Positions 7,668 to 53,997 of a DNA stretch of 64,000 nt are shown one piece after another. A program made the position numbers and the translations under genes. This stretch comes from Piromyces finnis finn (taxonomy: Eukaryota > Fungi > Neocallimastigomycota), in NCBI GenBank assembly GCA_002104945.1, contig MCFH01000005.1, positions 1,054,001-1,118,000 on the forward strand. Direction: 5' to 3'. The notes below the pieces were generated by a model, which was given only the letters and a program-made list of their open reading frames with translations, ran no database searches and was not told where the DNA came from. Numbering within the stretch: position 1 is the first letter of the stretch; each line of letters starts with the position of its first letter.

Positions 7668-10600
7668 ATGTATTTCAATAATCAACAGCAGCAACAACAA
7701 CAGAAGTTTATTCAAAATCTCCAAAAGATTCAACAACAACAACAACAGCAAAATCTTGGATTGAATCAGCTTCAATATCTACAGATGCAAAATCAATCAA
7801 TTCAACAACAACAGCTCCAAATGCAGCAGCAACAATATCAACAACAAATTCAATTACGTCAATTCCAACAACAGCAACAACAACTACAACAATTTAAACA
7901 ACAACAAATTCAACAAATGAAACAACAACAGCAGCAACAGATATATCAACAAATGCAACAATATCAATTATTAAATCAGCAGAATACGTTAACTCAATAT
8001 CAAAATGTAGCCGCTGCAAATCCTGCAGCAGCAGCAGCGGCAGCTTTACAAACTAATTCTGTTGCTGCTGCTGCTGCTGCTGCTGCCGCTGCTAAAAACA
8101 ATGCTTTACAACAACTTCAACAACAACCTGCACAATTTCAAAAAGTTATTCAGCAACAACAAGCATTAAATTCATCATTTGTAAATGACCAAGACTGGAA
8201 AACTAAAAATAAACAGAAAATAGATGAACAGAGAAAATTATGTATTCAAGAAATGTAACTATCTTGATTTTATAGTCTTTATTAGTGTCTTTAAGTAATA
8301 ACCAAACATTTCAAAAAGTAAATTTATCACATATTAATTTTTTCTATTTATACTTATTACAGTGTAAAGCGATTAATGGAAAATCAAAATTTGAATCTGA
8401 CTCAAGTTAATTCAAAGGCATTATTAGAAACCGCTACAAAAATTGAATTACAAATATTTACTAAAGCATCATCTTTTGTAATAATTAATTGAAATAGTTA
8501 TTTATTTTAAATAATATATAATATATAAAATATAAAATATTTATATAGTAATGATTTATTAAATAATATATAATTATGTAATTATATTTATAAAATGGTT
8601 GATGCAAATAACAGGAAGAATATAAGGCAATTATAACAAATCAATTACTTCATCCAAAGAATGGAGCTGGTAAATATACGATAATTATTATATTATATTC
8701 TTAATTATATTAATAATTATTAATTAATATTATCTTTTTATTTATTTATTTATTTATTTATATAGCAATAAAAAATAACATGCAAGTTAAAGTTCAACAG
8801 CCAGCTACTTTAGCCACTCATAATACTACACCTCAATTACAAGCAAGTATGAATATCAATAAAATTAATATTAATAGTATGTAATAATGTTAGCTACGAA
8901 TATTAATAATATTTCTTTATATATGACAACAGCAAATTTAGCAACCTCAGCATCTTTACAAACTAGACCACAAATTGCCCAACCAGTTGCTGTGGCAAAT
9001 ACTGTCCCTGTAAGTATAGTTAAGTGTGATAAAAACAATAAAAAATAATAATAAAATTAATTAACAATTAGTAATACTAAAATAAAATATGTTAATAATA
9101 AACATAAATATTAATATTTTATTTTAAATAGAAAACCACAGCTGTATCAAATGAAATTAATCAACCCGTTCAACTTCAACAAGCCACACTACAGAATCAA
9201 ACCCATACACAAGGAACACCTCAAACTCCAAGCCAAGCTGCAACTAAAGCGATAAATAAAGCCAATGATGATTTAACTGCTGAACAAAAAGAGGAAATGA
9301 TAAAAAAAGTAAAATAAGGCTATTATAAATATTAAATATTAAATCAATAAATGCTAATTAAATAAAATAATTAATCAATACATTACATAATGATTTTTTT
9401 TTTAGATTGAAAATGCTCAACAAATTGCACTTAAATTAAAAAAAATAATGCAAATTGTTAATATTAGTGATGCAAAAGTAAGAGAAAATCTTTTAAATAC
9501 GGTATTGTATAATAATAAATAAAAATATTTAAACTATAATAATTATTGTAAAAATTAAAATGAATATTTATTAAATAAATTTCATTAATATAATTTTTCT
9601 TTATTTTTTTTTTATTTAATTAGATTCTTTTAGTTCAACGTCAATATGAATGTAGAAAAGAAAAATTCATAATGGAAAATAACATATTTGAAAGAATTGA
9701 AAAGAATTTACATGTATATTATGATAATCTAATTAATCAATTTAAACAAAAAAAAATACAAATTGGTATATAATTTGATAAATAAGTATATATATTATAT
9801 TTTGTTATATATATAATATTTACATTTATATCTATTATATATATTTAATTTTTTTAAGGAGCAGGCAATGCAAATGCTGCCTCACAATTGACAAATTCCT
9901 TGGCATCAGCACAGCAAGCAAGAATTCAACAAATTCACCAAATTCAAGCACACCTTGCTGCTCAGAAAGCACAAACTCAAGCTAGTACCCAAGCACAACT
10001 TTCTAAGAAAGCTCAAGTTAATAATCAAGCTGCTGTAAAAGTAGAGGCTACTATTCCGGATACTATTAATAATACCCCAAATATTCAACCAAAATCACTT
10101 ACAGAAACTATCAAAACTGAAGCAAAGAATTTAAAAGCATCTTCATCAGAAGTTTTTACAAATGAAGGTATGTTTATTTAGATTTTAATTATTATATATT
10201 CTTTAAAAACAACGTCAAATAATGAAAACAATGATAAAAGATTAAATATATTTATATATATCATTAATTTTCTTTCTTTATATCAATGTTTTTATTATTA
10301 CTAAATATAAATGAATTTTTATAATGAAAATATGATGCACATTAAAAGATAATAAACAAGAAAATGATAAAACAACCACATCCTCATCAACTAAAAAAAG
10401 AAACAATAGAAAAACCAATACCACATCATCTTCATCTGTCTCATCAATTAATAATTTGTCTTCTAAGAAGTCTGAATCTTCTTCAACTGAATCAGGTTCC
10501 AAAAAGTTGGCTAATTCATCAAAAGATCAAGTTAAATTAGAAAAAGATGATTCATTTTTAGGAAAAATTAATAGAAATATTAATATTTTCGCATTAGAAA

Positions 10601-11977
10601 GCAAAAGTAAGATTTTTATAAAATATAGAAAGAAATCAATACCTGTTTTTTATAATATAATGAAAATTTGATTAACGTATATATATATTTAATAATTTTA
10701 TTATTATTAAATTTGATGTTATCTAGACTATAAAACTCATATAAAATCAAATTCAAAAACAAGAAATATTATTCAAAATTCATTTAAATATATTATTGAT
10801 CCAAATCATCCAGCTTATGGAATAAACTCTTGTGCAGAAGAAATTTCATCCTTATGCTTTCAAAGCAATAACATTGAACGTAAGACTAAACCATTGAAAT
10901 TAGAAAATATAAATGATAGTTCTAATGGTAAATATTTATTATTCATTGACTTATTATATAGTAAATTTAGTATATTAAATTTCTATGTAAATATATATAT
11001 ATATATTTTTTTTACCTCAAATATTTTTCCTATACTAATATATTTTTAATTTGATATAACAATTATTTCATATATTTATATATTTATATTAAAAAATAGA
11101 TCATATATCTTTATTTGAAGATATTATTAATAGAAAGAGTCATATTATTACAAGTGAAAATGATAATGATAATAAAAAGCCACAAACTAATAAAATGATT
11201 GCTGATGATAATGAAAGAAATAAAGTAGGTACTAAGAGAAAGTTTGATGAAATGACAAATACGGATTCTATAATTGTCAACAACAGTATTAAGAAAGCAA
11301 CGGTTAAAGACAAATATTCAAGCATTATTGATGAAATAAACTTTTTAAAAGACAAGTATAAGATTAATGTTAATATTGTAGATACATCTAATATTTCTCT
11401 TCTTTTAAAGGAAAAAGAAAATAAAAGTGGAGAAATTCCATGGAATGATTTTATTAATATGATTAATATTATTAAAAAAGAAGAATATCAAGATACAACA
11501 GAAAATCATACTTTAATGAACATAAATTATAACGATACATCCATAAAACAAAAGAATGCTCAACAAAAGATTAATAATGAACGTGTAATGTTAGTTATAT
11601 CTTTAAATCTTTCCAATTATATTGATACCACTGAAGTTGAAAATGAATATAATATACCAGGGGATAATCAAAATAATATTGTAATTTATGCTCGTATTCC
11701 AAAATCTACCCAACGCTACAGTCTTCAAGGAATATTTGATTGGAGTCTTTTATACACAAAGAAGAAATCTATATTCCAAAATTCTGAAGAAGATAATAAA
11801 TTAAAAGAAAAGAAAATTTATGACTTTATTTCGCATAAGCTTCATGATCAAGATGAAACTAGTGCCAAAGAAAAAATAAATATGGATATTGAAAATAAGC
11901 ATCCTATCACAATATCAAACCGTGTAATTAAAGTTTATAATATTGTTGAATGGATCGTAGAAGGTATTAAAAGTTAA
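7668..11977 (+). CDS. PolyQ/polyA-rich transcriptional coactivator with KIX-like domain, probable Med15/Gal11-like Mediator subunit (12 exons)
   Basis: Exons assembled in frame with GT-AG sites: 7668-8254, 8363-8477, 8615-8669, 8766-8846, 8933-9009, 9132-9308, 9406-9501, 9624-9765, 9859-10167, 10349-10606, 10727-10927, 11100-11977. The spliced segment DWKTKNKQKIDEQRKLCIQEIVKRL...LLETATKIELQIFTKASSFEEYKAII resembles the KIX three-helix pattern (DW...I...L...A.K.E..IF..A.S..EY). A KRKFDE NLS-like motif precedes a globular C-terminal domain. Family assignment is by resemblance only. Confidence 0.6.
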
Positions 11978-22876: not shown

Positions 22877-25678
22877 ATGAAGTCATTGTTAATTGCATCT
22901 TTATGCGCTATTGTCGTTAATGTTGCTGTTGCTGCTAATCCATACTTAGTTTGTGATGGTACTGATTACAGCTGTAAGCAAGAACAAGCAAGCAAGTGTC
23001 AACAAGCTGCTAATGCTTGCTGGCAACAACCATACAGTGAATCTGTTGGTCAACAATGTCAAGCTTTAAATAACCAATGTAACGAAATTTGGGCATACAA
23101 TGGTCCAGCTCAACAACCAGTTGAAACTTACACTACTACTTCAAGAGGAACAGCCTCCCTTACAAAGAAAGTTAACACTACTTCTGCTACAAAGAGAGTT
23201 ATCACATCTGTTTCTTCCACTGGTAAGACTCTTCCAACTACTGGTAAGACTCTTCCAACCACTGGTAAGACCATTCCAGTTACTTCCTCTGGTAAGACTC
23301 TCCCAGTTACTTCTTCCGGTAAGACTCTTCCAGTTACTTCCTCTGGTAAGACCCTCCCAGTCAGCACTTCTGCTGGTAAGACTCTTCCAGTTACTTCCTC
23401 TGGTAAGACTCTCCCAGTCAGCACTTCTGCTGGTAAGACCCTTCCAGTTACTTCCTCTGGTAAGACTCTCCCAGTTACTTCCTCTGGTAAGACTCTTCCA
23501 GTTACTTCCTCTGGTAAGACCCTCCCAGTCAGCACTTCTGCTGGTAAGACCCTTCCAGTTACTTCCTCTGGTAAGACTCTCCCAGTCAGCACTTCTGCTG
23601 GTAAGACTCTTCCAGTTACTTCCTCTGGTAAGACTCTTCCAGTTACTTCCTCTGGTAAGACTCTTCCAGTTACTTCCTCTGGTAAGACCCTTCCAGTTAC
23701 TTCCTCTGGTAAGACCCTTCCAGTTACTTCCTCTGGTAAGACCCTTCCAGTTACTTCCTCTGGTAAGACCCTCCCAGTCAGCACTTCTGCTGGTAAGACT
23801 CTTCCAGTTACTTCTTCCGGTAAGACTCTCCCAGTCAGCACTTCTGCTGGTAAGACCCTTCCAGTTACTTCCTCTGGTAAGACCCTCCCAGTTAGTTCCT
23901 CTGGTAAAACTCTCCCAGTTACTTCCTCTGGTAAGACCCTCCCAGTCAGCACTTCTGCTGGTAAGACTCTCCCAGTTACTTCCTCTGGTAAGACCCTCCC
24001 AGTCAGCACTTCTGCTGGTAAGACTCTCCCAGTTACTTCCTCTGGTAAGACCCTCCCAGTCAGCACTTCTGCTGGTAAGACTCTTCCAGTTACTTCCTCT
24101 GGTAAGACCCTCCCAGTTACTTCCTCTGGTAAAACTCTCCCAGTTACTTCCTCTGGTAAGACCCTCCCAGTCAGCACTTCTGCTGGTAAGACTCTCCCAG
24201 TTACTTCCTCTGGTAAGACCCTCCCAGTCAGCACTTCTGCTGGTAAGACTCTCCCAGTTACTTCCTCTGGTAAGACCCTCCCAGTCAGCACTTCTGCTGG
24301 TAAGACTCTCCCAGTTACTTCCTCTGGTAAGACCCTCCCAGTCAGCACTTCTTCCGGTAAGACTCTTCCAGTTACTTCCTCTGGTAAGACCCTCCCAGTC
24401 AGCACTTCTGCTGGTAAGACTCTTCCAGTTACTTCCTCTGGTAAGACCCTCCCAGTTAGTTCCTCTGGTAAAACTCTCCCAGTTACTTCCTCTGGTAAGA
24501 CCCTCCCAGTCAGCACTTCTGCTGGTAAGACTCTCCCAGTTACTTCCTCTGGTAAGACCCTCCCAGTCAGCACTTCTGCTGGTAAGACTCTCCCAGTTAC
24601 TTCCTCTGGTAAGACCCTCCCAGTCAGCACTTCTGCTGGTAAGACTCTTCCAGTTACTTCCTCTGGTAAGACTCTCCCAGTCAGCACTTCTGCTGGTAAG
24701 ACCCTTCCAGTTACTTCCTCTGGTAAGACTCTCCCAGTTACTTCCTCTGGTAAGACTCTTCCAGTTACTTCCTCTGGTAAGACCCTCCCAGTCAGCACTT
24801 CTGCTGGTAAGACCCTCCCAGTTACTTCCTCTGGTAAAACTCTCCCAGTTACTTCCTCTGGTAAGACCCTCCCAGTCAGCACTTCTGCTGGTAAGACTCT
24901 CCCAGTTACTTCCTCTGGTAAGACCCTCCCAGTCAGCACTTCTGCTGGTAAGACTCTCCCAGTTACTTCCTCTGGTAAGACCCTCCCAGTCAGCACTTCT
25001 GCTGGTAAGACTCTCCCAGTTACTTCCTCTGGTAAGACCCTCCCAGTCAGCACTTCTTCCGGTAAGACTCTCCCAGTTACTTCTTCTGGTAAGACCCTTC
25101 CAGTTACTTCCTCTGGTAAGACTCTCCCAGTTACTTCCTCTGGTAAGACTCTCCCAGTTACTTCCTCTGGTAAGACTCTCCCAGTTACTTCTTCTGGTAA
25201 GACCCTCCCAGTCAGCACTTCTGCTGGTAAGACTCTCCCAGTTACTTCCTCTGGTAAGACCCTCCCAGTCAGCACTTCTGCTGGTAAGACTCTTCCAGTT
25301 ACTTCCTCTGGTAAGACTCTTCCAACTACTGGTAAGACTCTCCCAGTTAGTTCCTCTGCTAAGACTCTTCCAACTACTGGTAAGACTCTCCCAGTTAGTT
25401 CCTCTGCTAAGACTCTCCCAACTACTGGTAAGACTCTCCCAACCAGCTCAAGAACTACAAGAACTACTACAAGAGTCACTACTACTAGACAACCACAACC
25501 AACTCAATCTTATGATGAAGATTACACTAGCTGTTCCTCTGATGACTGGTCTTGCAAAACTCAAATGTCTGACAAATGTTACACTAAAGCTAGAGAATGT
25601 TGGTCAAAGCCATACACTCAACAATTAGCTGAAGAATGTAATGCTATTCAAGCCCAATGTCAAAGAATTTGGAGCTAA
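22877..25678 (+). CDS. Secreted Ser/Thr-rich tandem-repeat protein with terminal six-Cys modules (dumbbell protein 1, 933 aa)
   Basis: Signal-peptide-like MKSLLIASLCAIVVNVAVA. N- and C-terminal modules both show C-x6-C-x7-C-x6-C-x12-C-x6-C-x3-W. Central GKTLPV(TSS/STSA) array. Single open frame with normal start and stop; intronless. Confidence 0.9.
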   Translation: MKSLLIASLCAIVVNVAVAANPYLVCDGTDYSCKQEQASKCQQAANACWQQPYSESVGQQCQALNNQCNEIWAYNGPAQQPVETYTTTSRGTASLTKKVNTTSATKRVITSVSSTGKTLPTTGKTLPTTGKTIPVTSSGKTLPVTSSGKTLPVTSSGKTLPVSTSAGKTLPVTSSGKTLPVSTSAGKTLPVTSSGKTLPVTSSGKTLPVTSSGKTLPVSTSAGKTLPVTSSGKTLPVSTSAGKTLPVTSSGKTLPVTSSGKTLPVTSSGKTLPVTSSGKTLPVTSSGKTLPVTSSGKTLPVSTSAGKTLPVTSSGKTLPVSTSAGKTLPVTSSGKTLPVSSSGKTLPVTSSGKTLPVSTSAGKTLPVTSSGKTLPVSTSAGKTLPVTSSGKTLPVSTSAGKTLPVTSSGKTLPVTSSGKTLPVTSSGKTLPVSTSAGKTLPVTSSGKTLPVSTSAGKTLPVTSSGKTLPVSTSAGKTLPVTSSGKTLPVSTSSGKTLPVTSSGKTLPVSTSAGKTLPVTSSGKTLPVSSSGKTLPVTSSGKTLPVSTSAGKTLPVTSSGKTLPVSTSAGKTLPVTSSGKTLPVSTSAGKTLPVTSSGKTLPVSTSAGKTLPVTSSGKTLPVTSSGKTLPVTSSGKTLPVSTSAGKTLPVTSSGKTLPVTSSGKTLPVSTSAGKTLPVTSSGKTLPVSTSAGKTLPVTSSGKTLPVSTSAGKTLPVTSSGKTLPVSTSSGKTLPVTSSGKTLPVTSSGKTLPVTSSGKTLPVTSSGKTLPVTSSGKTLPVSTSAGKTLPVTSSGKTLPVSTSAGKTLPVTSSGKTLPTTGKTLPVSSSAKTLPTTGKTLPVSSSAKTLPTTGKTLPTSSRTTRTTTRVTTTRQPQPTQSYDEDYTSCSSDDWSCKTQMSDKCYTKARECWSKPYTQQLAEECNAIQAQCQRIWS
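23221..25440 (+). repeat. Coding minisatellite of 27-nt (GKTLPVTSS) and 30-nt (GKTLPVSTSA) units, with 21-nt (GKTLPTT) units at both edges
   Basis: Directly visible: ggtaagac(t/c)ct(t/c)ccagt repeated roughly 75-80 times (estimated by eye). Confidence 0.97.
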
Positions 25679-27393
25679 ATGATAGTTAATTATAAGAAAT
25701 AAAATTTAATAATATTTAATAATTTTCATTTTGATAATAATAAAATGAATTAAAATATAAAATTCTTTATATCAATAATTACCATCGAACACCTAATTTA
25801 AAAAGATCAAATTTATATATATTTAATTATATTTATCGATTAAAATAATTAAATAGATCTTAAAAATTTAAATAAAAAATTATTATTAATGTAATAAATA
25901 AATAAACTAATAAAATATAATATAAAAATATATTTCATTTTTGTTATATAAATGTGTATTTTTTTTATCATTTAAAATGTTTAAAATATTAAAGCTAATT
26001 TAATATTGATAGTTTTTAACTATAAGATTATAATTTTTTTATTTTATGACTATTTTTAAAACTATAAATATTTTTCTTAAATCTACAGTGTTTGCTAAAA
26101 AGTCTAGCGAAACTGAAACTATTTATTTAAAACAAATAAATAGAATAATAAAAAAGATAAAAAAAGCCATAAAATTTATTAAAAATTTTATTTATACTTA
26201 TCCTTTTTTATATACTTTTTTATTGTTGTCGTTATAGAAAAAAATAGGTATATATTTAATAATAATAATAATAATAAATAAATAAATAAATAATCATTAC
26301 AATTGGCTTATTTTTTTAAATATTTAGGATAAAAAGCAGAAAAAAGAAAGAAAAAAAGGCAAATGATTATTTTTTTTTATCTTGAAATTTTCATATATAA
26401 TTATTTATATTAAATAAAGTTCTAATTTTCTAATTCTATTGGAATTTTTTGGTATAAAAACATCATGTTTCATTTAATATTATTCTAATTTATGGGGAAC
26501 ACCAAAAATGTATCCATTTTATAAAATTCGGGAATTATTTTTAATTAAATTTATATGGATTTGTACTTCAAAAAAAAAAAAAAAAACATAATAAAAAAAC
26601 CTATAAATGATATTATTATGATAAATAGATCTTCTTTTTTCTTTAAAAGTACATAATCCTAACCTATTATAAAAGCAATATAAGAAATAAAGAAAATTTA
26701 GATAAATTTGTAGCATATTTTCATTGATGATCTACTTATTTTTTTTAATCGTTTACTAATACTATTTTTGAAAAATCCACATCTTTTTAATTTCTTTCTT
26801 TCTTTTTTTTTTTTTTTTAAAAAAAATGGTGGATTTTTTCAAATAACCTTAAACTTTATCATTCTTTTTTTTTTTTTTTAATAATAAATTTAATTGAGAT
26901 GATTTTATAAATATGTAATTATGATTTTTAAAGAAAAATAACAAACAAACAAAATAAAAAGTAGCTATTTTGAAAAAACACTACAATAAACACAATATCA
27001 TATTTCAAAACTATATACTTTTATTTTAAAATATTATTATTGTTATTATTTATTAACATATTATCATTAAATTTAAGGAAATAGAAAAAGAATCTATGAA
27101 TCTTTAACAATTCAAAATTGCTCAAATATAGTTCTTTTATCCGTTTTTCAGAGTAATTGATTATTTTATAATGTATAGCTATGATTCTTTATATTTATCA
27201 TGTTTATTTTTATTAATTTTATATTATTTATAAAACACATAAAAAATTATTATTTTGTCAAAATTATTTTTTTTCAACATATTCATATTATTTTTATCTA
27301 TTTTATATTTATACTATATTATCTTAAAAGTTATAAGCTATATAAGTATATATTATTCTATTATAAATATTTCTTTTTCTTGGGTAGGCCAAC

Positions 27394-27448
<55 letters not shown>
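27394..27448. repeat. (TAAA)n microsatellite
   Basis: About 13 perfect TAAA units. Confidence 0.85.
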
Positions 27449-30191
27449 AAATTTTATGAGTACAAGACAGGCTATTTCAAAGTATTAATTCTTTTTTTTT
27501 TTTTTTTTCAACTTTTATCAATAAATTGTATATTTAAATTTATATTTAATGATTTATTATTTCTCTATATTAATGCATTTTATATTATTGTGAAATACTA
27601 TATACTTTTTTGTTAATCATACAATTATTAATTGAATTTCATTTTATTCAATTTTAATTATTTATTGATTCCTAATAAAGAATAAATCTATTGTATATAT
27701 TTTAAAATTTTTATTTTTCTTTTATGAATGAATATTGTTACTATCCTTTTTATATTTATACTTACAACAAAGAAATGAAATAAAAACTTGTAAAAAAAAA
27801 AAATTCTAACCCTATTTTAATTATAATTTTTTTTTTGGAGCATTCATATAATATATCTTATATAAGTATTTTAAATTTTTTTTTATCTTAAATTAAAGAA
27901 TATTAATCTTTAATTAATATATTGACAATATAATAAAATCAATTTAATTCATATATTAAAAATAGATGTTTATTCTTATTTATCATATATTAATTAATAT
28001 TGTATAAAAGCATAATATTTTGTATAGTAATGTAGCTTGAAACATAATATCACACAACTGAAAATAAAATATTATTATTTATACTTTTACTTGAAAATGT
28101 AAAACAAAACATGCTAAATATTGTATATTAAAAAAGAATATAATGTTTGTATTATAAGAATGAGAAAATGATAACAAAATAAAAATAAAAAAAAAATGAA
28201 AAATTATTGATATTAATATCAAAAAAAAAAAAAAATGACTAATAATTTTAAATATTCATTTAATAAAAATTGAGGATGAATTTCAATTGTAGATCTTTGT
28301 ATGTCATCCGCAATCAATATTCTATTTAATAATTAATAATTATAAAAAAATATAAATTTAATAATAACTAATAAATAATAATAATGAATAATTATTAATA
28401 GATTATAACTATAGAAAATAATAAAAATTATAGTAGTTAATAATAATAATAATAATAATAATATTTCTAATAATAATATCAGAAATAACTACCATCCCTC
28501 TCTCTTATATTATCATTATTACATAAAGTTTAAAAAAAACTGATAATATTTAATAGAAAAAAATAAACCAACTTTTTTATTATATCAAAATACCATTTAT
28601 AATGGTAATAATAAAAAATAATGTTAATTTTATTTTAAATTAAAAATCTTAAAATGGAAAGAGGGATGTTTACATATTACATATAATTTTTTAATAAAAA
28701 TGTTTTTATTATTATTTTAATTATTATTTTTATAAGCTATGATGAAGAATCCTTTTTTTTTTAATATAAAATTTATAATTCTAAATATTTTTAAATACCA
28801 AATTTGATAATAGCATCATATTTTCTTTATAAAAAAAAAGAAAAAATAATAAACTTTAAATGTATTGAAACTTTAATTCATTATATTTTAATTCTATGAC
28901 CTCCTTTTTTTTTTTTAATGCAGAGATAAGTTTAAAATGAAATATATATTTAAACAATAATATGAATATTAAAAAAAAATTTTTTTTTTAATAATTATGG
29001 CTGTTTATTTATATTACTATATAAAAATTATATTTATTATATATATTATCATAGATAATAATTAATTCTGTGCATCATTAGTTTATATTATCGTTTTGAT
29101 AATTTATTATTTTATTAAAAATAAGGTTTAATAACTAAAATAATTTTTTTTTAAGGATATATATTATAAATTTTAATTTCTATATTTATATGAATCATAT
29201 TCAATTTAATTTATTACTGTATTCTTTTAAAGGGTCATATTAATATACTTGTTTAAGAAAATTAATTAATTTTAAATTAATATCATAAACTATAATAACT
29301 ATTCTTTATTTATTGTATGCTTTTTTTTATAATATTATATAGAAATAAATAAGAATTAAAGTTTATGATAAAAATATTTGTTTTACATTATATTACTTTT
29401 TTATTATAAGCCATCATTTTTATAGTTTTATTAGTAAAACAATAATTCATATTTCATTATTATTTTTATAAGCCACTATACTATTATTTTATTATAATAA
29501 AAGAGTATATATAATGTATTATGGAATACAAAGTATATGAATAATAGCTTTAATGAATAATAGAATTAAAAGTGTAAAATTCATTTTTTAAACACATCTT
29601 TTTACATGTCAGAATAATAATGGGAATATGAAAAAAGTAAAAATATCTAAATTTTAAATAATAATATTATTTATCAATTTTTAATAAAAGTTACACTTTT
29701 TTTATGTTATGACATGAAATAAATTGTAATACAAGTTTATGATAATATGGTGTCCCAATTTTGTTTTAAAATATAATATTATTGTATTTTTTCCCTTTTT
29801 TTTTTAATGAAGTAATTCTACTATTATAATTATTAATAATAAATTAAAAAGAAAAAATTTTAATTAAATGTAAAAGTTTAATATATTAATAAATAAAGTT
29901 TATAGAAAATTTTTTGTGTAAAGTCATAATATTTTTTTTTTTTTTTTTTTTTTTGATAGATATTATTAAACTTTAATTTCAATCATTTTTTTTTAAAATA
30001 AAACAAGATAATATTAATAATATTAATATATTTGATTAATTGAATTATATATTAATATGATTTTATTAGTTTATATATATATATAAAAAAGAGTATAAAA
30101 AGAATAAAAATTTTCTTTAAGTAGATAATTATTATATAAAATTAATATTTTATATTTAATATTATAAAAACAATTTTAATTTGTTAAACGC

Positions 30192-30253
30192 TCAGCAAGA
30201 CTGGTGCTTTTAATAAAATTAGGAAAAGGGAATTTATAGAAGTTCTTGAGGAA
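30192..30253 (+). promoter_or_regulatory. Candidate conserved cis-element upstream of dumbbell gene 2
   Basis: CAGCAAGACTGGTG (30193-30206) matches the gene 1 motif at 13 of 14 positions. TTTATAGAAGTTCTTGAGGAA (30233-30253) matches the second block. Confidence 0.55.
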
Positions 30254-30411
30254 ATAACTAATATAATAATAATAATATAATATATTATTATATTTCTAAA
30301 AATTAAAAAAACATAAAAATTTAAATAAATCAACAAACTAATTATATAATACAAAAAGATAATATAATTAATAATTTAAGTTTAAGAAACAAAATAAAAC
30401 AAAAATTGAAA

Positions 30412-32961
30412 ATGAAATCAGCTATTTTTGGTTCTGCTTTATTAGTACTTGCTTCTTTATCTAATGCTGCCAATCCATACCTCGTTTGTGATGGTTCTGA
30501 TTACAGCTGTAAGCAAGAACAAGCTTCTTTATGTCAACAAGCTGCTAATGCTTGCTGGCAACAACCATTCAGTGAATCTGTAGGTCAAGAATGTCAAGCT
30601 ATTAACAACCAATGTAACGAAATTTGGTCATACAGTGGTAGTCCACAAGTTGTTTACACTACTACCGCTAATACCTATCGTACAACTAAAACTATTTACA
30701 CTTCCACTAGATCTTCTACTAAGGCTCTTCCAACCTCTTCTTCTGCAGTTAAGACTCTTCCAACCACCACCACTTCTGCTGTCAAGACTCTTCCAACCAC
30801 CACCACTTCTGCTGTCAAGACTCTTCCAACCACCACTACTTCTGCTGTCAAGACTCTTCCAACCACTACTACTTCTGCTGTCAAGACTCTTCCAACCACT
30901 ACTACTTCTGCTGTCAAGACTCTTCCAACTACCACTACTTCTGCTGTCAAGACTCTTCCAACTTCCTCTTCTGCAGTTAAGACTCTTCCAACTACCACCA
31001 CTTCTGCTGTCAAGACTCTTCCAACTACCACCACTTCTGCTGTCAAGACTCTTCCAACTACCACCACTTCTGCTGTCAAGACTCTTCCAACTACCACCAC
31101 TTCTGCTGTCAAGACTCTTCCAACTACTACCACTTCTGCTGTCAAGACTCTTCCAACTACTACCACTTCTGCTGTCAAGACTCTTCCAACTACCACTACT
31201 TCTGCTGTCAAGACTCTTCCAACTACCACTACTTCTGCTGTCAAGACTCTTCCAACTTCCTCTTCTGCAGTTAAGACTCTTCCAACTACCACCACTTCTG
31301 CTGTCAAGACTCTTCCAACTACCACCACTTCTGCTGTCAAGACTCTTCCAACTACCACCACTTCTGCTGTCAAGACTCTTCCAACTACTACCACTTCTGC
31401 TGTCAAGACTCTTCCAACTACTACCACTTCTGCTGTCAAGACTCTTCCAACTACTACCACTTCTGCTGTCAAGACTCTTCCAACTACTACCACTTCTGCT
31501 GTCAAGACTCTTCCAACTACTACCACTTCTGCTGTCAAGACTCTTCCAACCACCACCACTTCTGCTGTCAAGACTCTTCCAACCACCACTACTTCTGCTG
31601 TCAAGACTCTTCCAACCACCACTACTTCTGCTGTCAAGACTCTTCCAACCACCACTACTTCTGCTGTCAAGACTCTTCCAACCACCACTACTTCTGCTGT
31701 CAAGACTCTTCCAACCACCACTACTTCTGCTGTCAAGACTCTTCCAACCACCACTACTTCTGCTGTCAAGACTCTTCCAACCACCACTACTTCTGCTGTC
31801 AAGACTCTTCCAACCACCACTACTTCTGCTGTCAAGACTCTTCCAACCACCACCACTTCTGCTGTCAAGACTCTTCCAACCACCACCACTTCTGCTGTCA
31901 AGACTCTTCCAACTACCACCACTTCTGCTGTCAAGACTCTTCCAACCACCACCACTTCTGCTGTCAAGACTCTTCCAACCACCACTACTTCTGCTGTCAA
32001 GACTCTTCCAACCACCACTACTTCTGCTGTCAAGACTCTTCCAACCACCACTACTTCTGCTGTCAAGACTCTTCCAACCACCACTACTTCTGCTGTCAAG
32101 ACTCTTCCAACCACCACTACTTCTGCTGTCAAGACTCTTCCAACTACCACCACTTCTGCTGTCAAGACTCTTCCAACCACCACCACTTCTGCTGTCAAGA
32201 CTCTTCCAACTACTACCACTTCTGCTGTCAAGACTCTTCCAACCACCACCACTTCTGCTGTCAAGACTCTTCCAACCACCACCACTTCTGCTGTCAAGAC
32301 TCTTCCAACCACCACCACTTCTGCTGTCAAGACTCTTCCAACCACCACTACTTCTGCTGTCAAGACTCTTCCAACTACCACCACTTCTGCTGTCAAGACT
32401 CTTCCAACCACCACTACTTCTGCTGTCAAGACTCTTCCAACTACCACCACTACTAAGTCTATCCCAACTACCACCACTACTAAGACTATTCGTATTACCA
32501 CCACTACTAAGTCTATCCCAACTACCACCACTACTAAGTCTATTCCAACTACCACCACTACTAAGTCTATTCCAACTACCACCACTACTAAGTCTATTCC
32601 AACTACCACCACTACTAAGTCTATTCCAACTACCACCACTACTAAGTCTATTCCAACTACCACCACTACTAAGTCTATTCCAACTACCACCACTACTAAG
32701 TCTATTCCAACTACCACCACTACTAAGACTATTCGTACTACCACCACCACCAAGACTATTCGTACTACCACTTATCAATCTCAACCAACTAACACTTCTA
32801 CTGATTTCTTAAGCTGCTCTTCTGATGATTGGAACTGTAAGACTCAAATGTCTGAAAAGTGTTATGCTGTCGCCAGAGATTGTTGGAGTCAAACCTACAC
32901 TCAAAGCTTAGCTGAAGAATGTAATGCTATTCAATCTCAATGCCAAAAGATTTGGAACTAG
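30412..32961 (+). CDS. Secreted Thr-rich tandem-repeat protein with terminal six-Cys modules (dumbbell protein 2), paralog of 22877-25678
   Basis: ATG at 30412 (the track start at 30406 is TTG). Signal-peptide-like MKSAIFGSALLVLASLSNA. N-module ANPYLVCDGSDYSCKQEQASLCQQAANACWQQPFSESVGQECQAINNQCNEIW is nearly identical to gene 1. C-module SCSSDDWNCKTQMSEKCY...ECNAIQSQCQKIWN. Confidence 0.9.
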   Translation: MKSAIFGSALLVLASLSNAANPYLVCDGSDYSCKQEQASLCQQAANACWQQPFSESVGQECQAINNQCNEIWSYSGSPQVVYTTTANTYRTTKTIYTSTRSSTKALPTSSSAVKTLPTTTTSAVKTLPTTTTSAVKTLPTTTTSAVKTLPTTTTSAVKTLPTTTTSAVKTLPTTTTSAVKTLPTSSSAVKTLPTTTTSAVKTLPTTTTSAVKTLPTTTTSAVKTLPTTTTSAVKTLPTTTTSAVKTLPTTTTSAVKTLPTTTTSAVKTLPTTTTSAVKTLPTSSSAVKTLPTTTTSAVKTLPTTTTSAVKTLPTTTTSAVKTLPTTTTSAVKTLPTTTTSAVKTLPTTTTSAVKTLPTTTTSAVKTLPTTTTSAVKTLPTTTTSAVKTLPTTTTSAVKTLPTTTTSAVKTLPTTTTSAVKTLPTTTTSAVKTLPTTTTSAVKTLPTTTTSAVKTLPTTTTSAVKTLPTTTTSAVKTLPTTTTSAVKTLPTTTTSAVKTLPTTTTSAVKTLPTTTTSAVKTLPTTTTSAVKTLPTTTTSAVKTLPTTTTSAVKTLPTTTTSAVKTLPTTTTSAVKTLPTTTTSAVKTLPTTTTSAVKTLPTTTTSAVKTLPTTTTSAVKTLPTTTTSAVKTLPTTTTSAVKTLPTTTTSAVKTLPTTTTSAVKTLPTTTTSAVKTLPTTTTTKSIPTTTTTKTIRITTTTKSIPTTTTTKSIPTTTTTKSIPTTTTTKSIPTTTTTKSIPTTTTTKSIPTTTTTKSIPTTTTTKSIPTTTTTKTIRTTTTTKTIRTTTYQSQPTNTSTDFLSCSSDDWNCKTQMSEKCYAVARDCWSQTYTQSLAEECNAIQSQCQKIWN
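30721..32772 (+). repeat. Coding minisatellite: 33-nt (SAVKTLPTTTT) units followed by 27-nt (KSIPTTTTT / KTIRTTTTT) units
   Basis: Directly visible: roughly 50 units of 33 nt, then about 11 of 27 nt (estimated by eye). A 30-nt TSSSAVKTLP variant occurs at about 30733, 30961 and 31255. Confidence 0.97.
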
Positions 32962-48474: not shown

Positions 48475-51400
48475 ATGGATTTTTTTTATCATTTTTTTTT
48501 AATTATTCTATTGGTGATAAATTTCATTCCGGTACAATCAAAAGATATTATAATACATAATAATGATGAAACTTTTTTGAATTTACAAGAGGTTATTAAT
48601 AATCAAGATGATAAAAATATTACATTGAGATTTGTGGATAATTACTATAATATGACATTACTTCCTTACTCTATCGCAGTCACCGTTTCAAATAATATAA
48701 ATTTTGTAGGAAATGAAAATAAAACTATTTTTGATTATAATAATAATTATAAGGGAGTGTTTTGTTTTACTTTTGTAAAAAGTTCAAATTTATTCACTGT
48801 AAAACTAGAAAATATTATCTTTGAAAATTTCTCAACAAATTTTATAGAGTATACTGGGGTTCAAACATTTTTTATAAAATCTTACATCTATGATTTTCAA
48901 ATGATATATCACAATTGTGTATTTAGAAATAATAAATACAGTCTATTTCATTTTGATATTTTTTACGAAAATAAAGGGGATAAAAATGTTTCTCAAGTCA
49001 GTATAGAAGATTGTGATTTTTAGTATGTATAATATCAATGCAATATATATACTTTTTTTTTTTTCATTAATTTATGGTATTGATGTTTATATTTACTAAC
49101 CATAACATTATATTTTAAATAATAGTAATAATTCTTATAAAATGTTTTCCATTACCCATAACTCTAGTCAATATCGGTTAATTACAGACAATTATTTAGA
49201 TTTCATAATAAACTTTTATAATTGTAAATTTATTAATAGTATCCGACTAATTTATTCTGAATCTGCTTTAGTCAATATTAAAAATTGTTTGTAGAATATT
49301 TTTATATATACTATTTTTTTTTTAAACCTATAATAGTATTTTATTTATTTATCAATTAATAATCCCTATGAAATTTAATACAAAAAAAAAAAAAAAAAAA
49401 GAGAAAAAAAATATATATATATATATATATAATTTAATAATTAATACAATACAAATTTTTCAATAATTAATTTATAGGTTATTTTTCTGGTATTGTAGTA
49501 AATGAATTTTCAAACGATGTTATCTTCTACAAAACAAATTATAACCCTTCTGAATTATATATTACGGATTCAATATTCGAAAATATTCACATAAAAAATA
49601 ATTTACCAATGATTAAAAGTCAAAGAGTCCATTTAGAGTAATAATCCAATAGTATTTATGACATTTATAATAAACAATAGACAAGTTATTAGTATTTAAC
49701 TCTTTTTTTTACCATAAAATATTTTATTTATTCTATTTTTAATATTAATTTATATATTACTCAATAAATTAATCATTATTATTACACTTTTTTCATTGTT
49801 AGAATTACAAATACAACTTTTACCAATTGTTTTTCAGATTATGGTTATTTATTTTATATATGTAATCAAAATAACCAACAAATTATTATTAAAAATTCTG
49901 TATTTTCAAGTAAATAATAGAGAGAGAAACGTTATAATGATATAATTTTAAATTATATAATTAAAAAAGAATATTTGTAACAACTTATTTTATTCCTTTT
50001 TTTTTTTTTTTTTAAATATATAATAATTATTTAAAATAGATTTCACTTCTTTATTCAAAGGTGAATTTATTAACTATAATATTATTAATTCAATATTTCA
50101 AAATACCATTTTTACAAATTCAATTCCTGCTATTATTGATTCAAAGAATGCTATCATTTACATTTCAGATTCAAAGTTTAAAGATTTAAGGTAGCATATA
50201 ATAGTATATTTCATCATCCAAAGTTAAAGAGGATTAAATAAATATTAATGCATACATATATATATATATATATTCCTTTTTTTTTTTTTTTTTCTAATAA
50301 CTTAATTTAATAATTATATTTAACATAATAGTTTATCTATGGGTTTATTCGGAGAAGAAGGTCATTATTCTTTTAACAATATTGAATTAAGTAATATTAA
50401 AACAAATTCAAAAGCACTTCTTCATTTCATCTATTCAGATATTACTATTCATACAATGAAAGTAGAGAATATAGTATGTGTTGGAGATAGAAGTGATACT
50501 TCATTTATTTTATTAGATTCAGGCGAAAATAATATGAAAATTTCAATGAAGGATATTAAAATAAAAAATAGTTCATCTAACGGTCCATTTATTAAAATTA
50601 AAGGAAATTCAAGTAAAATCCATTTTGAAAATTTTAATTTAGTTAATGTTACTTCCTATGGATCTGTTATTGATATTATATCTAAAAAGGTAATATATAT
50701 ATTGAATATATTATATAGAGTAATGAAAATATATATGTAATATACATAAATTTGGTATAGATGAATAGATAAGAATATTTATTTTATTTTATTTTTTTTA
50801 ATAATAAATAAATGGGATAATAATAAACTTTAAGAGTGAAATTACCATGTCAAAAATCAATTTAGATCATAATATAAACAATGATAAATTGAATTGCGGA
50901 ATTATTCATTTTTGTAATGCCATTGATATTTCAATTTCTAATTCAGCCTTTAATAATAATCGTAGTAAAAGTAATGGTGGTGCTATGTATGACATCTATA
51001 ATATTATTAATATACCTAAGCTATTTTCAAAAAAAAAAAAAAAAAATAAAGTATTTTATAACATTTAATTTTTATGTATAATTATGAATATTGCAATGTC
51101 AAAAAAAAAAAAACTATTAATAGGTGTTTTAACGATTTATCAAGTATGAATATGAACCTAACATCAAATTTATTTGAAAATAATGAGGGTATTAATGGTG
51201 GGGCCTTATATTTTATAAATCATAAAAATGAACGTTTTAGTGATTATAATGACGCCGACCTATGGAAAATAAATATTGAAAATAATACTTTTATAGGAAA
51301 TAATGCAGAAAATTTCGGTGGCGCTTTATATTCAGAATTTAATAAACTCTACCTGGCAACAACAAAAAATAATAATATTATTAATAATAGTGCTGGAATT

Positions 51401-53997
51401 ATGGGAGGTGGATTATACTCTCCAAATTTAATTCAAAAAAATTTATTTGGTTTAGAAAATAATTATATTAGGGATAACCTTGTTAACTTACATCCAAATG
51501 ATTATTCGTCAAAACCCTCCTATATTACATTAAACACGACGTTAGAAAAAGATATTGAAATTGCCTCTGGAGGCCATTTATCCTTGTTATTTACATTATT
51601 TGATGAATTTGATAATATTGTTTATGATATTTCAAATTATTATCAATCCATTTCAATAAAAATTAAATTAATTGAAAATACACTACCATCGATGGGTAAA
51701 ATGATGGAAAAGGGAATAAAAATTGATAAATATAGTCATCATTATTTATTAAGCAATATTTGTTCTTTTAATAATGGTATTTATAAAAAAAAAAAAAATA
51801 AAAAAATTTTTTTTTTCATTTATTTATTTATCTATATCTATATCAATATCTATATATACTTTGATTATTTTTACTTTAGTATTATAATAAATTGGAACAT
51901 ATAATTTTTATAATAATTTCGATATTATTATTATATTTAATGTTTTACATATATATATTTTTAAATAGGTCAATGTATATTAAATAATATGAGAATATAT
52001 TCCAACCCAAAAAATTATATAATGCAATTTACAGTTGATAATTATTATGATAATATTCAGTTTAAACGTAATGATATTCCATTGAGAATAACAGGATGTA
52101 ATGATAATCAAATACAAATGTATGATAGAAATAATATTTTACATTGTATAGATCCATTATGTGATGATTCTTGTCCAGTATCAACAACAGCTATATGTGT
52201 TCCATCCATTGATAATAAATATAATTATTCCTATTTAAATCATTGCCAATGTTTACTTGGATATGAAGGGCCCCATTGTGAAAATAAAAAATTTATTGAT
52301 TTCAAGTAAAAAAAAAAAAAATTACTATATATTACTATTTTTTTTTTTTTACTATTAATATTAAATGAAATGAATAATAAATAATAAATATTATTTATTC
52401 TTTTTTTTTTTTATTATTATTATTATTTTAATATATAAATATATATAATATAAAATATAATATTTATCTATCTATCTATCTATTAGTAATCTTAATAATA
52501 AAATTGCTACTATAAATCTTGCAGAATTAATGATTGTCATTCTATCCATGGTATATATAATTTACAATAAAGATAAAAGGGTAATCAAGGATTTAGGCGT
52601 ATTAAAAATTTTAATATTTCATGTTGGAATGATAATGATATTCATAAGTAATTTCTTTTCGACCTATATGAATTTTACGGGATGTTCCTTTCATTTCTTA
52701 TTTAAATTTTTAGGAATTGGACTTGTTGTCATTACGTATTATAGTTTTATATTTTTGGCGATAGGATTAGGGGTATTAAGTCATAATGATGAAAAATTTA
52801 AGGCAATTATGAATGAATTTTTATCCTTAAATAATAGTTATGGAACGGGAGGAAGGTATCAATCGATTGACAGTTTAAAAAATAGTACTGTTGATTTAAG
52901 AGATTTTGATTTAAAATTAAATCAAGAAGTACACCTGGTCAATCCTATCAAGGAATGTAAATCCATTGAAGAAATTAATAAAGATATAGAATTAAAATTA
53001 ATGAAATTTAGTTCCTCAACAACCCTTGAAAAAATTAAACCTGCCAAAAATTCAACATTAACAAGAAATGGAGTACTAACATCCAAACTTAAACAATGCT
53101 ATAGAAAAATGGCCTCCGAAGAAAGTATTTTTTTCAGGGATACCCATGAAAAATTTAATCTTAATAATAGTAGTGTATTGGAATTAATCATTAAATCAAC
53201 CCATTCTTTTATCAAAGAATTATTTATTTTTAATATAATATACACAGTAATTCTTGTTTTTTTGATTATTTTTCAAAAAGTAAATAATACTGACAAGGGT
53301 TCAAAACGTTTTGTTCAAAATTTGAATGGGGATTGGATCTATCGATGTTCCCTTGACCATCCCAATTTAGTTTTAAATTTCATTTATTTTACCCTAATGG
53401 TAATACTATTAATTCAGGGAAGAAAACTTTACAAATATGAATGTATATTTAAGCCTGTTCTATATCTTAGTATTGCAAGCTATATTATGATTTTTTGTCC
53501 ATTACTAAGTGTAATTTAATATATATATATATATTTTATTTATTTTAATATTTTTTTAGTTAAACAATTCAATTTTATATTATACTAACTTTATTACCTT
53601 TTTTTTTTTATTGAATATATAAAAAAAGAATTTTAGTTATTTCTTTGTTAAACAAAGTAAGGTTGTTGTTGATTCTATAATTAATTCAATATGTTATTTC
53701 ATTTGCTTTATCATATTTATACATAAAATAGTATATTATATTTTGATAAATGATGAAAACAATGCCAAAAAATATTTTGTATATGATAAAAAGGAAAGAC
53801 GTAATTCATCTTCTTCCGTCATGCTATTATACGAAAGCAGAGAAGATAATCGACAATCTGATTTAATTATACAAAATTATATAGAGTTATACCGCTGTTG
53901 TTCAAAAATATTTGAATTTAATCAAGGAAAAATTCGATACATTGGTAGTACAAGTAGTTTAAATATTAGTAGTGAATATCTAAGGACGATTGATTAA
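48475..53997 (+). CDS. Class-C-like 7TM receptor (non-canonical GPCR) with large beta-helix/pectin-lyase-like ectodomain and EGF-like module (11 exons)
   Basis: Exons 48475-49022, 49126-49286, 49478-49637, 49803-49909, 50040-50190, 50332-50689, 50835-50986, 51124-51776, 51969-52305, 52487-53510, 53629-53997 join in one frame. Features: signal peptide; N/F/I-rich repeats with GGA(M/L)Y/C and FxxNxA (Pmp-like) motifs; EGF-like CDDSC...C...CQCLLGYEGPHC; seven hydrophobic segments; WIYRC in the putative ECL2. Confidence 0.8.

What the first reader, a model, noticed from the sequence alone, without database searches (positions are those of the whole stretch)
22877..32961. Tandem pair of secreted dumbbell proteins: an unassigned six-Cys module at both ends of a ~700-aa repeat stalk
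Seen: both genes encode signal peptide + module + Ser/Thr/Pro/Lys stalk + module. All four modules share exact spacing C-x6-C-x7-C-x6-C-x12-C-x6-C-x3-W, with conserved D[YW]xCK, CW and a terminal IW (P[YF] after CW in three of four). The proteins end right after the second module, with no TM helix, GPI signal or catalytic domain. N-modules are nearly identical between paralogs, as are C-modules, but N and C differ, so the two ends have been conserved as distinct types. Established: the pattern does not match the fungal dockerin (CBM10), CBM1 or CBM18 Cys patterns, or the GYY-type scaffoldin repeats of gut fungi. Inference: these are bivalent extracellular cross-linkers or tethers. A glycosylated extended stalk could span a long distance, and the exposed aromatics could bind glycan or partner proteins (plant fibre, cell wall, cellulosome parts or microbes).
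Basis: partly seen in the sequence, partly recalled or inferred. Interest (0 to 1): 0.85.

Follow-up and report, generated by a model that had tools for sequence, protein, structure and literature searches.

The report
Gut-fungus dumbbell proteins, new end module
Two neighbouring genes of the anaerobic gut fungus Piromyces finnis encode secreted, mucin-like rods capped at both ends by a small disulfide-locked helical module that no database recognises; gut fungi also hang this module on xylanases, cellulases, esterases, a protease and a matrix deacetylase, so it is probably an undescribed attachment tag.

Summary
Gene A (22877-25678) and gene B (30412-32961) each encode a signal peptide, a six-Cys module, a Thr/Ser/Pro/Lys tandem-repeat stalk of 806 or 722 aa, and a second six-Cys module that ends the protein. 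All four modules have the stated Cys spacing.

The module has no Pfam or PDB sequence match. A profile search of 1.84 billion proteins gave 28 hits; every named one is from Neocallimastigomycota except one weak chance hit in a fish.

AlphaFold2 predicts a loop plus a two-helix hairpin (pLDDT 86). Fold searches return only generic hairpins.

New here:
- The module is portable and terminal. It sits on GH11, GH5, CE2, an S8 subtilase and Agd3-like deacetylases (two copies), and on stalk-only proteins.
- N-type and C-type modules are separate lineages (99/99 support).
- In complete proteins, N-type occurs only together with C-type.

I read the module as an attachment tag and the dumbbells as bivalent non-catalytic tethers. 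The ligand is unknown: protein docking about 0.4, glycan binding about 0.3.

The scan noted this kind of module before on other DNA of this genome (s1-180608, s1-173786); neither note was followed up.

The parts
22877..25678 (+). Gene A: intronless CDS of 933 aa encoding a secreted dumbbell protein
   Evidence: ORF and translation. The identical 933-aa gene is called in NCBI GCA_002104945.1, contig MCFH01000005.1.
22877..22933 (+). Gene A signal peptide (aa 1-19; predicted cleavage after VA, before ANPY)
   Evidence: The only hydrophobic window in the protein (KD19 2.1 at aa 1-3). The cleavage site is inferred from the -3/-1 rule.
22934..23095 (+). Gene A N-type six-Cys module (aa 20-73)
   Evidence: Exact Cys pattern at 22952-23092. 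HMM domain E 1.8e-21. Falls in the N-type clade.
23096..25510 (+). Gene A stalk: 806 aa of 9-10-aa repeats (core GKTLPV[TS]S), with 81 K[ST][LIV]P motifs, no acidic residues among the ten commonest, pI about 12
   Evidence: TRF finds periods of 27, 57 and 168 nt over 23262-25420, 12.9 copies of the 168-nt unit at 90%. Composition.
25511..25675 (+). Gene A C-type six-Cys module (aa 879-933; the protein ends IWS)
   Evidence: Pattern at 25532-25672. HMM E 3.1e-21. AF2 model with pLDDT 85.9 shows helices 13-31 and 37-54.
30412..32961 (+). Gene B: intronless CDS of 849 aa, paralogous dumbbell protein
   Evidence: Translation. No gene model with exactly this product is on record.
30412..30468 (+). 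Gene B signal peptide (aa 1-19; cleavage after SNA)
   Evidence: Hydrophobic N-terminus. Cleavage site inferred.
30469..30630 (+). Gene B N-type module (aa 20-73)
   Evidence: Pattern at 30487-30627. HMM E 3e-21. 88% identical to gene A's N-module.
30631..32793 (+). Gene B stalk: 722 aa, 45% Thr, with 11-aa units (TSAVKTLPTTT) followed by 9-aa units (TTKSIPTTT), pI 11.5
   Evidence: TRF finds 33 nt x 52.1 copies at 96% (30740-32451) and 27 nt x 12.7 copies at 94% (32428-32771). Composition.
32794..32958 (+). Gene B C-type module (aa 795-849; the protein ends IWN)
   Evidence: Pattern at 32815-32955. HMM E 1.3e-21. 71% identical to gene A's C-module.

Best explanation
Genes A and B encode secreted, non-catalytic glycoprotein rods. 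The long stalk is polycationic and presumably O-glycosylated. It holds two different versions (N-type and C-type) of one small module at its two ends.

The module is specific to anaerobic gut fungi. It is an N-terminal loop plus an antiparallel two-helix hairpin, probably locked by three disulfides. From the i/i+7 spacing I infer C23-C50 and C30-C43 between the helices, and C8-C15 closing the loop.

The module acts as a portable attachment tag. Gut fungi place it at the extreme end of plant-wall enzymes, a protease and a matrix deacetylase.

My preferred mechanism is that the tag is a protein-docking module rather than a glycan binder. N-type and C-type would be a complementary pair, or would each self-associate. 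The dumbbells would then link up or bridge into an extracellular layer on the fungal surface, and proteins carrying a C-type tag would be held in that layer.

Shown: the anatomy, the family range, the fusion partners, the N/C split and the predicted fold.
Inferred: the disulfide map, glycosylation, any binding and the identity of the ligand.
For: 1. Anatomy: signal peptide, N-module, stalk and C-module in both genes.

2. Portability and terminal position. The C-type module ends GH11 (P0009, P0034), GH5 (P0019, P0033), CE2 (P0002, P0032, P0006), an S8 subtilase (P0020) and Agd3-like CBM87+CE18 proteins, which carry two copies (L007, L009).

3. None of the scanned members has CBM_10 or CBM_1, so the tag sits where a dockerin or CBM would otherwise sit.

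4. The predicted fold is a helical hairpin in both types (pLDDT 85.9). The best structural matches are generic hairpins, among them dimerisation or docking domains such as Taz1, BRAF BRS and a PKA-DHR14 fusion (Z 5.5-5.8).

5. N-type and C-type are old, separate lineages (99/99). N-type occurs only with a C-type in complete proteins: gene A, gene B, P0001, P0002, P0018, L001 and L008. C-type often occurs alone.

6. Type-specific columns include a charge reversal at position 52, which I predict to face outward: E in 9 of 9 N-types, K/R in 19 of 26 C-types. E18 and E45 are further N-type traits.

7. Stalk length between the caps varies from about 32 aa (P0001) to 806 aa while the caps are conserved. 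Selection therefore acts on the two ends being joined.

8. The partners include enzymes that do not act on plant fibre (S8, Agd3-like). This fits retention at the fungal surface or in its matrix better than binding to one plant polymer.
Against: - There is no binding data of any kind.
- AF2 of the natural mini-dumbbell P0001 gave two well-folded modules but a pTM of only 0.43 and a disordered linker, so no confident N-C contact. Only three paired rows were in the alignment, so the test is weak.
- On the helical wheel the outer faces of both helices are polar. An obligate four-helix-bundle dimer is therefore not obvious (inference).
- Small Cys-rich terminal modules on fungal CAZymes are more often glycan binders (CBM1, CBM18).
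- UniRef's automatic name for P0004 is 'CBM1 domain-containing protein'.
- Expression of genes A and B themselves was not checked. Only relatives were seen on short metagenome contigs that look transcript-like, one (L007) ending in a run of A.
Confidence: 0.4

Rival explanations
1. The module is a new carbohydrate-binding module that works like CBM1. A face with conserved aromatics (W13, Y24, W31, Y35, W54) binds a polysaccharide of the plant wall or of the fungal wall. The dumbbells are then bivalent glycan cross-linkers or fibre-to-fungus tethers.
For: - The architecture mirrors CBM1 enzymes: a small disulfide-rich module at the extreme terminus, joined by a Thr-rich linker to GH11, GH5 and CE2.
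- Aromatics are strongly conserved. W13, Y24 and W31 are 11 and 7 residues apart on one helix, about 16 and 10.5 Å, close to multiples of the glucose repeat (inference).
- UniRef's automatic name for P0004 is 'CBM1 domain-containing'.
- N-type loses the central aromatic (Q24 in 7 of 9), which could mean a different glycan ligand at each end.
Against: - There is no Pfam CBM hit at E 10.
- The predicted fold is all-helical, whereas the described CBM fold classes are beta-rich (established knowledge of CAZy fold families).
- The aromatics sit on the disulfide side facing conserved aliphatics of helix 2 and may be core residues.
- The module co-occurs with a sub-threshold hevein-like module in P0020 and with CBM87 in the Agd3-like proteins, and is fused to a protease.
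Confidence: 0.3
2. The acidic caps bind the polycationic K-T-x-P stalks of the same family. The proteins then self-assemble into a gel or coacervate-like extracellular matrix into which enzymes carrying the tag partition. In this reading the repeat stalk is the multivalent receptor, a scaffoldin-like role.
For: - The caps have pI 4.1-4.6. The stalks have pI 11.5-12, with 81 and 61 regularly spaced K[ST][LIV]P motifs.
- The same motif fills the linkers of most family members: GH11 P0009, CE2 P0002, the stalk-only proteins L006, L010 and L013b, and the dumbbells L001 and L008.
- N-type has a conserved acidic stripe (E18, E45, E52) on faces predicted to point outward.
Against: - GH5 (P0019) and the Agd3-like members have linkers without the motif.
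- Thr/Lys stalks seem to be a general linker style in this fungus (unchecked scan note s1-176918).
- Heavy O-glycosylation would shield the backbone.
- There is no direct evidence.
Confidence: 0.12
3. The modules are inert end caps or folding and stability elements. They protect the termini of mucin-like wall or surface proteins and of enzyme linkers from the exopeptidases of the gut, and have no ligand of their own.
For: - The location is strictly terminal: directly after the signal peptide, or ending the protein.
- The fold is compact and disulfide-locked.
Against: - It does not explain why enzymes would carry a long linker plus a cap at all.
- It does not explain why two distinct types are conserved with position-specific surface residues.
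- It does not explain why the Agd3-like proteins carry two modules in tandem, one of them internal.
Confidence: 0.08

Closest known systems
Fungal dockerin (non-catalytic docking domain, CBM10 family) of Neocallimastigomycota
   Same: It is a small, disulfide-containing, non-catalytic module found only at the ends of secreted gut-fungal proteins. It is joined by Thr-rich linkers to GH, CE and protease domains, is sometimes present in tandem, and is restricted to the same phylum.
   Different: There is no sequence relation (no CBM_10 hit at E 10). The Cys pattern differs. The predicted fold is a helical hairpin rather than a small beta structure. It comes in two position-specific types. No receptor is known.
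CBM1 (fungal cellulose-binding domain)
   Same: It is terminal, small, disulfide-locked and rich in conserved aromatics, and sits on an O-glycosylatable linker of cellulases and xylanases. UniRef auto-labels one member as CBM1.
   Different: There is no Pfam CBM_1 match. It has six Cys in about 50 aa rather than four in about 36. The predicted fold is helical, not a beta cystine-knot. It is also found on a protease and a GAG-type deacetylase.
Bacterial type I dockerin
   Same: The working surface is a pair of antiparallel helices in a module of about 60-70 aa at the end of enzymes. This is a functional analogy for a helix-pair docking tag.
   Different: The bacterial module is stabilised by Ca2+-binding loops, not disulfides, and shows no sequence similarity. 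This is analogy only; membership was not tested beyond the Pfam scan.
Gel-forming mucins and spider-silk spidroins (terminal assembly domains flanking a long repeat region)
   Same: The overall logic matches: a long, fast-evolving tandem-repeat core flanked by two different, conserved terminal domains. In those systems the terminal domains drive end-to-end assembly.
   Different: The terminal domains are unrelated (no VWD, CTCK or spidroin NT/CT hits). The module here is far smaller and is also used as a tag on enzymes.
Disulfide-stapled helical hairpins (CHCH twin-CX9C domains, plant alpha-hairpinins)
   Same: A two-helix hairpin is pinned by two parallel inter-helix disulfides from Cys pairs on one helical face.
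   Different: The spacing here is C-x6-C on both helices, not CX9C or CX3C. There is an extra N-terminal loop disulfide. The setting is secreted and modular, and no homology is detectable.

Membership tests
Gut-fungal six-Cys helical-hairpin end module (the family defined here) | C-x6-C-x7-C-x6-C-x(8-12)-C-x6-C with D12, K16, CW31 and I53-W54 | tested here: met
   All four window modules match exactly. D12, C15, C23, C30, C43 and C50 are invariant across 37 modules.
Gut-fungal six-Cys helical-hairpin end module (the family defined here) | Position at the extreme N-terminus (after the signal peptide) or the extreme C-terminus of secreted proteins | tested here: met
   This holds for genes A and B and for relatives. 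The only internal copies are the first module of the tandem pair in L007 and L009.
Fungal dockerin / CBM10 | Match to the CBM_10 profile (PF02013) and its Cys pattern | tested here: not met
   No Pfam family at E 10 for the four modules. No CBM_10 in the scanned relatives.
Fungal dockerin / CBM10 | Small beta-structured fold | tested here: not met
   AF2 predicts two helices, 13-31 and 37-54, with pLDDT 85.9.
Fungal dockerin / CBM10 | Binding to the ScaA-type scaffoldin | not testable with these tools
   Needs binding assays or complex prediction.
CBM1 | Match to the CBM_1 profile (PF00734); four-Cys motif of about 36 aa | tested here: not met
   No hit at E 10, even for P0004, which UniRef names as CBM1-containing.
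CBM1 | Binding of crystalline cellulose through a planar aromatic face | not testable with these tools
The helical wheel suggests the aromatics are at least partly buried (inference).
CFEM | Eight-Cys domain matching PF05730 | tested here: not met
   The module has six Cys. There is no CFEM hit at E 10 for P0024, which UniRef auto-names as CFEM-containing, or for the window modules.
CHCH (twin CX9C) helical hairpins | Two CX9C motifs; import into the mitochondrial intermembrane space without a signal peptide | tested here: not met
   The spacing is C-x6-C on each helix, and the proteins carry signal peptides.
Gel-forming mucins | Long Ser/Thr/Pro tandem-repeat region | tested here: met
   Stalks of 806 and 722 aa with 43-55% Ser+Thr and 9-10% Pro.
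Gel-forming mucins | VWD / C8 / TIL and CTCK terminal assembly domains | tested here: not met
   No Pfam domain in the termini.

The most novel reading that the evidence does not exclude
Gut fungi have a second extracellular assembly system that does not depend on dockerins. N-type and C-type hairpins would be a complementary docking pair. The polycationic dumbbells would polymerise head-to-tail, or bridge, into a surface matrix. Enzymes carrying a C-type tag (GH11, GH5, CE2, S8, Agd3-like) would be recruited into that matrix.
Probability: 0.2. Interest if true: 0.85.

Novelty: new variant of a known kind. Interest (0 to 1): 0.62.

Why it matters
Anaerobic gut fungi are among the best degraders of raw plant fibre. 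How they place enzymes on their surface and on the substrate is understood only through the dockerin-scaffoldin system, whose receptor side is itself poorly defined.

A second phylum-specific terminal tag would change how gut-fungal secretomes are annotated and sorted into 'free' and 'complexed' enzymes. It is carried by xylanases, cellulases, acetyl-xylan esterases, a protease and a matrix deacetylase, and non-catalytic proteins display it at both ends.

If its ligand is found, the module could also serve enzyme engineering. It is about 50 aa long, disulfide-locked, and comes in two types, which makes it a candidate orthogonal docking or immobilisation part.

Tried and rejected
- Pfam on the four modules at E 10 gave nothing. 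PDB sequence search with a single module and with the 37-row profile gave only noise, E 1.3 or worse, including a 'cellophane-induced protein 1' hit at E 1.8 that did not reappear in either fold search.
- Foldseek against the PDB gave a best E of 1.8. VIA-align wide gave a best Z of 6.5, below the level the tool itself says is common for helical models. No specific fold relative was found.
- Three word-index homology searches, with the N-module region, the C-module region and the GH11 fusion's module, found nothing or only a near-copy. That tool is too insensitive for a 50-aa domain at about 45% identity. The full HMMER scan and the metagenome scan were what worked.
- I tried to align N- and C-type fragments onto the mini-dumbbell P0001. 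MAFFT stacked all of them on the C half, so I rebuilt the alignment with full-length dumbbells.
- AF2 of P0001 as a test of N-C docking was inconclusive (pTM 0.43).
- Local alignment of 600 nt upstream and downstream of the two genes scored no better than shuffles. The duplication is therefore not recent outside the coding ends. This crude test cannot see short promoter blocks.
- Six literature searches, including accession numbers of relatives, found no paper that describes the module. Haitjema et al. 2017 is not held.
- Hit P0027 (grass carp, E 5.5e-4) is a short repeated motif, not a module, and was rejected as chance.
Full report
**What is in the window.** The window is very AT-rich, with 13-18% G+C in non-coding stretches. 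Two islands rise to 30-42% G+C at 22-26 kb and 30-33 kb. These hold two long ORFs on the + strand, 22877-25678 (933 aa) and 30406/30412-32961 (849 aa from the ATG).

Neighbouring ORFs are eukaryotic: a metacaspase, RhoGEF, TLDc, a Nab2-type zinc finger and MFS transporters. Gene A is called as exactly this 933-aa gene in NCBI assembly GCA_002104945.1, contig MCFH01000005.1. The same contig carries ORX57797.1, which is annotated as Piromyces finnis. The genome is therefore that anaerobic gut fungus, as earlier scan notes stated. No gene model with gene B's exact product is on record.

**Check of the observation.** A six-frame pattern scan finds C-x6-C-x7-C-x6-C-x12-C-x6-C-x3-W exactly four times, at the two ends of both proteins, and nowhere else in the window. 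A family HMM scores each copy near 1e-21, and nothing else in the window scores below E 2.7.

- Each protein has a single hydrophobic segment, the signal peptide. Each ends right after the second module, with no TM helix or GPI-type tail.
- The stalks are 806 and 722 aa of near-perfect tandem repeats. In gene A the periods are 27, 57 and 168 nt. In gene B there are 52 copies of a 33-nt unit at 96% identity, then 12.7 copies of a 27-nt unit.
- The N-modules are 88% identical, the C-modules 71%, and N versus C about 35%.
- The stalks are strongly basic, with pI 11.5-12 and 81 and 61 K[ST][LIV]P motifs. The modules are acidic, pI 4.1-4.6.

**Is the module known?** Pfam gives no hit at E 10. PDB sequence searches with one module and with a 37-row profile give only noise.

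AlphaFold2 on the 37-row alignment gives a confident model (pLDDT 85.9). It is an irregular N-terminal segment followed by two helices, residues 13-31 and 37-54. Both module types of the natural mini-dumbbell P0001 give the same fold.

Cys 23 and 30 on helix 1, and Cys 43 and 50 on helix 2, are each seven residues apart, and 23+50 equals 30+43. I therefore infer two inter-helix disulfides (C23-C50, C30-C43) plus a C8-C15 loop disulfide. This pairing is inferred, not shown.

Foldseek (best E 1.8) and VIA-align wide (best Z 6.5) return only generic helical hairpins. Six literature searches found no description of the module. UniRef's automatic names for two relatives, 'CBM1 domain-containing' and 'CFEM domain-containing', have no Pfam support at E 10.

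**The family.** A profile of the four modules, searched against 1.84 billion representative proteins, found 28 hits. Every hit with a source name is from Neocallimastigomycota: Piromyces finnis, Piromyces sp. E2, Anaeromyces robustus, three Neocallimastix and Pecoramyces. The exception is one weak chance hit in a fish. A metagenome scan added ten loci.

Architectures, confirmed with Pfam:
- GH11 xylanase - linker - C-module (P0009, P0034).
- GH5 - linker - C-module (P0019, P0033).
- N-module - CE2 esterase - stalk - C-module (P0002, P0032). P0016 and P0006 are partial versions.
- S8 subtilase - sub-threshold hevein-like module - stalk - C-module (P0020).
- Agd3-like CBM87 + CE18 + Agd3_C - linker - two modules in tandem (L007, L009).
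- Signal peptide - stalk - C-module, with no catalytic domain (P0004, P0007, P0010, P0012, L006, L010, and a 729-aa A. robustus gene).
- Further dumbbells: L001-L004, L008, P0018, and the 160-aa P0001, whose linker is only about 32 aa.

No scanned member has CBM_10 or CBM_1. In A. robustus, two stalk-plus-C-module genes lie side by side next to a GH11 gene, so tandem family clusters are not unique to this window. L007 ends in a run of A about 280 nt after the stop codon, and several contigs are gene-sized, which suggests transcripts. Expression of genes A and B themselves was not tested.

**Two types.** A maximum-likelihood tree of 37 modules separates all nine N-terminal modules (motif NPYL[VI]C) from all others with 99/99 support. 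The N/C distinction therefore predates the divergence of several genera.

In complete proteins, N-type is found only together with a C-type. The two exceptions, P0003 and P0016, look like truncated or frame-shifted models. C-type often stands alone.

Type-specific columns:

| Position | N-type | C-type |
|---|---|---|
| 3-4 | N-P | variable |
| 7 | V/I | S |
| 13 | Y | W |
| 19 | Q | M/K |
| 24 | Q | Y |
| 52 | E (9/9) | K/R (19/26) |

On a helical wheel, positions 18, 45 and 52 point away from the disulfide face. N-type has E at all three.

**Mechanism.** Shown: the module is a portable terminal element that the lineage attaches to unrelated secreted enzymes through the same kind of linker, and genes A and B carry one of each type at the ends of a very long stalk. 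Portable non-catalytic terminal modules on secreted enzymes are, as a class, targeting or binding modules (established from CBMs and dockerins). I therefore read the module as an attachment tag and the dumbbells as bivalent non-catalytic tethers.

The ligand is open. I favour protein docking (about 0.4) for these reasons:
- The fold is helical.
- Two position-specific types co-occur, with a charge-reversed outward-facing residue.
- The module is duplicated in tandem on the Agd3-like enzymes.
- The partner list includes a protease and a deacetylase that presumably works on the fungus's own matrix.

Glycan binding (about 0.3) is kept alive by the CBM1-like architecture and the conserved aromatics. 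A cap-binds-stalk matrix model (about 0.12) is suggested by the acidic caps and basic repeats. An inert-cap model (about 0.08) explains the least.

The one computational test I could make of N-C docking was AF2 of P0001. It gave no confident inter-module packing (pTM 0.43). With only three paired rows in the alignment, this is weak evidence either way.

**Comparison with known systems.** The module works most like a fungal dockerin or CBM1 in where it sits and what it is attached to. It fails the sequence and fold criteria of both. The protein design, with two different conserved end domains around a fast-evolving repeat core, resembles mucins and spidroins in logic only. As a fold it is a disulfide-stapled hairpin like CHCH domains or alpha-hairpinins, but with different Cys spacing and a different setting.

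**Verdict.** It is confined to anaerobic gut fungi, and I could not find it in Pfam, the PDB or the searchable literature.

The scan had already noted what looks like the same module elsewhere in this genome: s1-180608 (both ends of two other proteins) and s1-173786 (the end of a GH5). Neither note was followed up, and I could not compare their sequences.

The weak profile hits P0017, P0024, P0026 and P0028 are arrays of 12-Cys units, each unit being two hairpin-like six-Cys halves. They may correspond to the '12-cysteine helical domain' family of note s1-171710, which would make this a wider superfamily. That link was not tested.

Noticed in passing
L007:155-2779 and L009:145-2787 (metagenome contigs): Gut-fungus-like contigs encode complete Agd3-type proteins (CBM87 + CE18 deacetylase + Agd3_C, E 1e-86) followed by two six-Cys modules. 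Agd3 deacetylates the adhesive exopolysaccharide galactosaminogalactan in Aspergillus. No held paper mentions Agd3 together with Neocallimastigomycota.
   Followed up: partly
L013:899-3265 (-), 8001-8601 (+), 10598-11765 (-) (Anaeromyces robustus MCFG01000050.1): Two stalk-plus-C-module genes (729 aa and 163 aa, each with an intron just after the signal peptide) lie next to a GH11 gene. This is a second tandem cluster of the family in another genus.
   Followed up: partly
P0004 and P0024 (UniRef A0A1Y1XFM6, A0A1Y1XMS0): The automatic UniRef names 'CBM1 domain-containing' and 'CFEM domain-containing' for family members are not supported by the Pfam CBM_1 or CFEM models, even at E 10. They are probably low-threshold profile matches to Cys-rich sequence.
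   Followed up: yes
P0017, P0024, P0026, P0028: These secreted proteins are built from three or so repeats of a 12-Cys unit, two six-Cys halves with the same C-x6-C-x7-C-x6-C start but different loop lengths, followed by a Thr/Lys tail. They hit the module profile weakly (E 6e-7 to 7e-4). They may be a distant branch of the same superfamily and may equal the family of scan note s1-171710.
   Followed up: no
window 30412-32961: Gene B has no gene model with this exact product in the collection, while gene A does. Gene B may be unannotated or modelled differently in the deposited genome.
   Followed up: partly
L006:94-1068: The K-T-I-P stalk of a stalk-only family member hits Pfam Gp5_trimer_C (phage T4 gp5 beta-helix) at E 1.6e-14. 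This is almost certainly a repeat-periodicity artefact, but it shows that such stalks can attract false annotations.
   Followed up: no
window 54677-56266 (-) and 58364-59998 (-): Two MFS transporter genes lie in tandem (MFS_1, E 1e-49 and 3e-51).
   Followed up: no
window 51074-51904 (+): A 276-aa ORF has a marginal Chlamydia_PMP repeat hit (E 4e-4, right at the cut-off). It may be a secreted repeat protein.
   Followed up: no
L001-L004: The same dumbbell gene was recovered from four metagenome samples with different numbers of the 11-aa stalk repeat (484 aa in the complete copy, fewer repeats in the others). This is either repeat-number polymorphism or short-read collapse.
   Followed up: no
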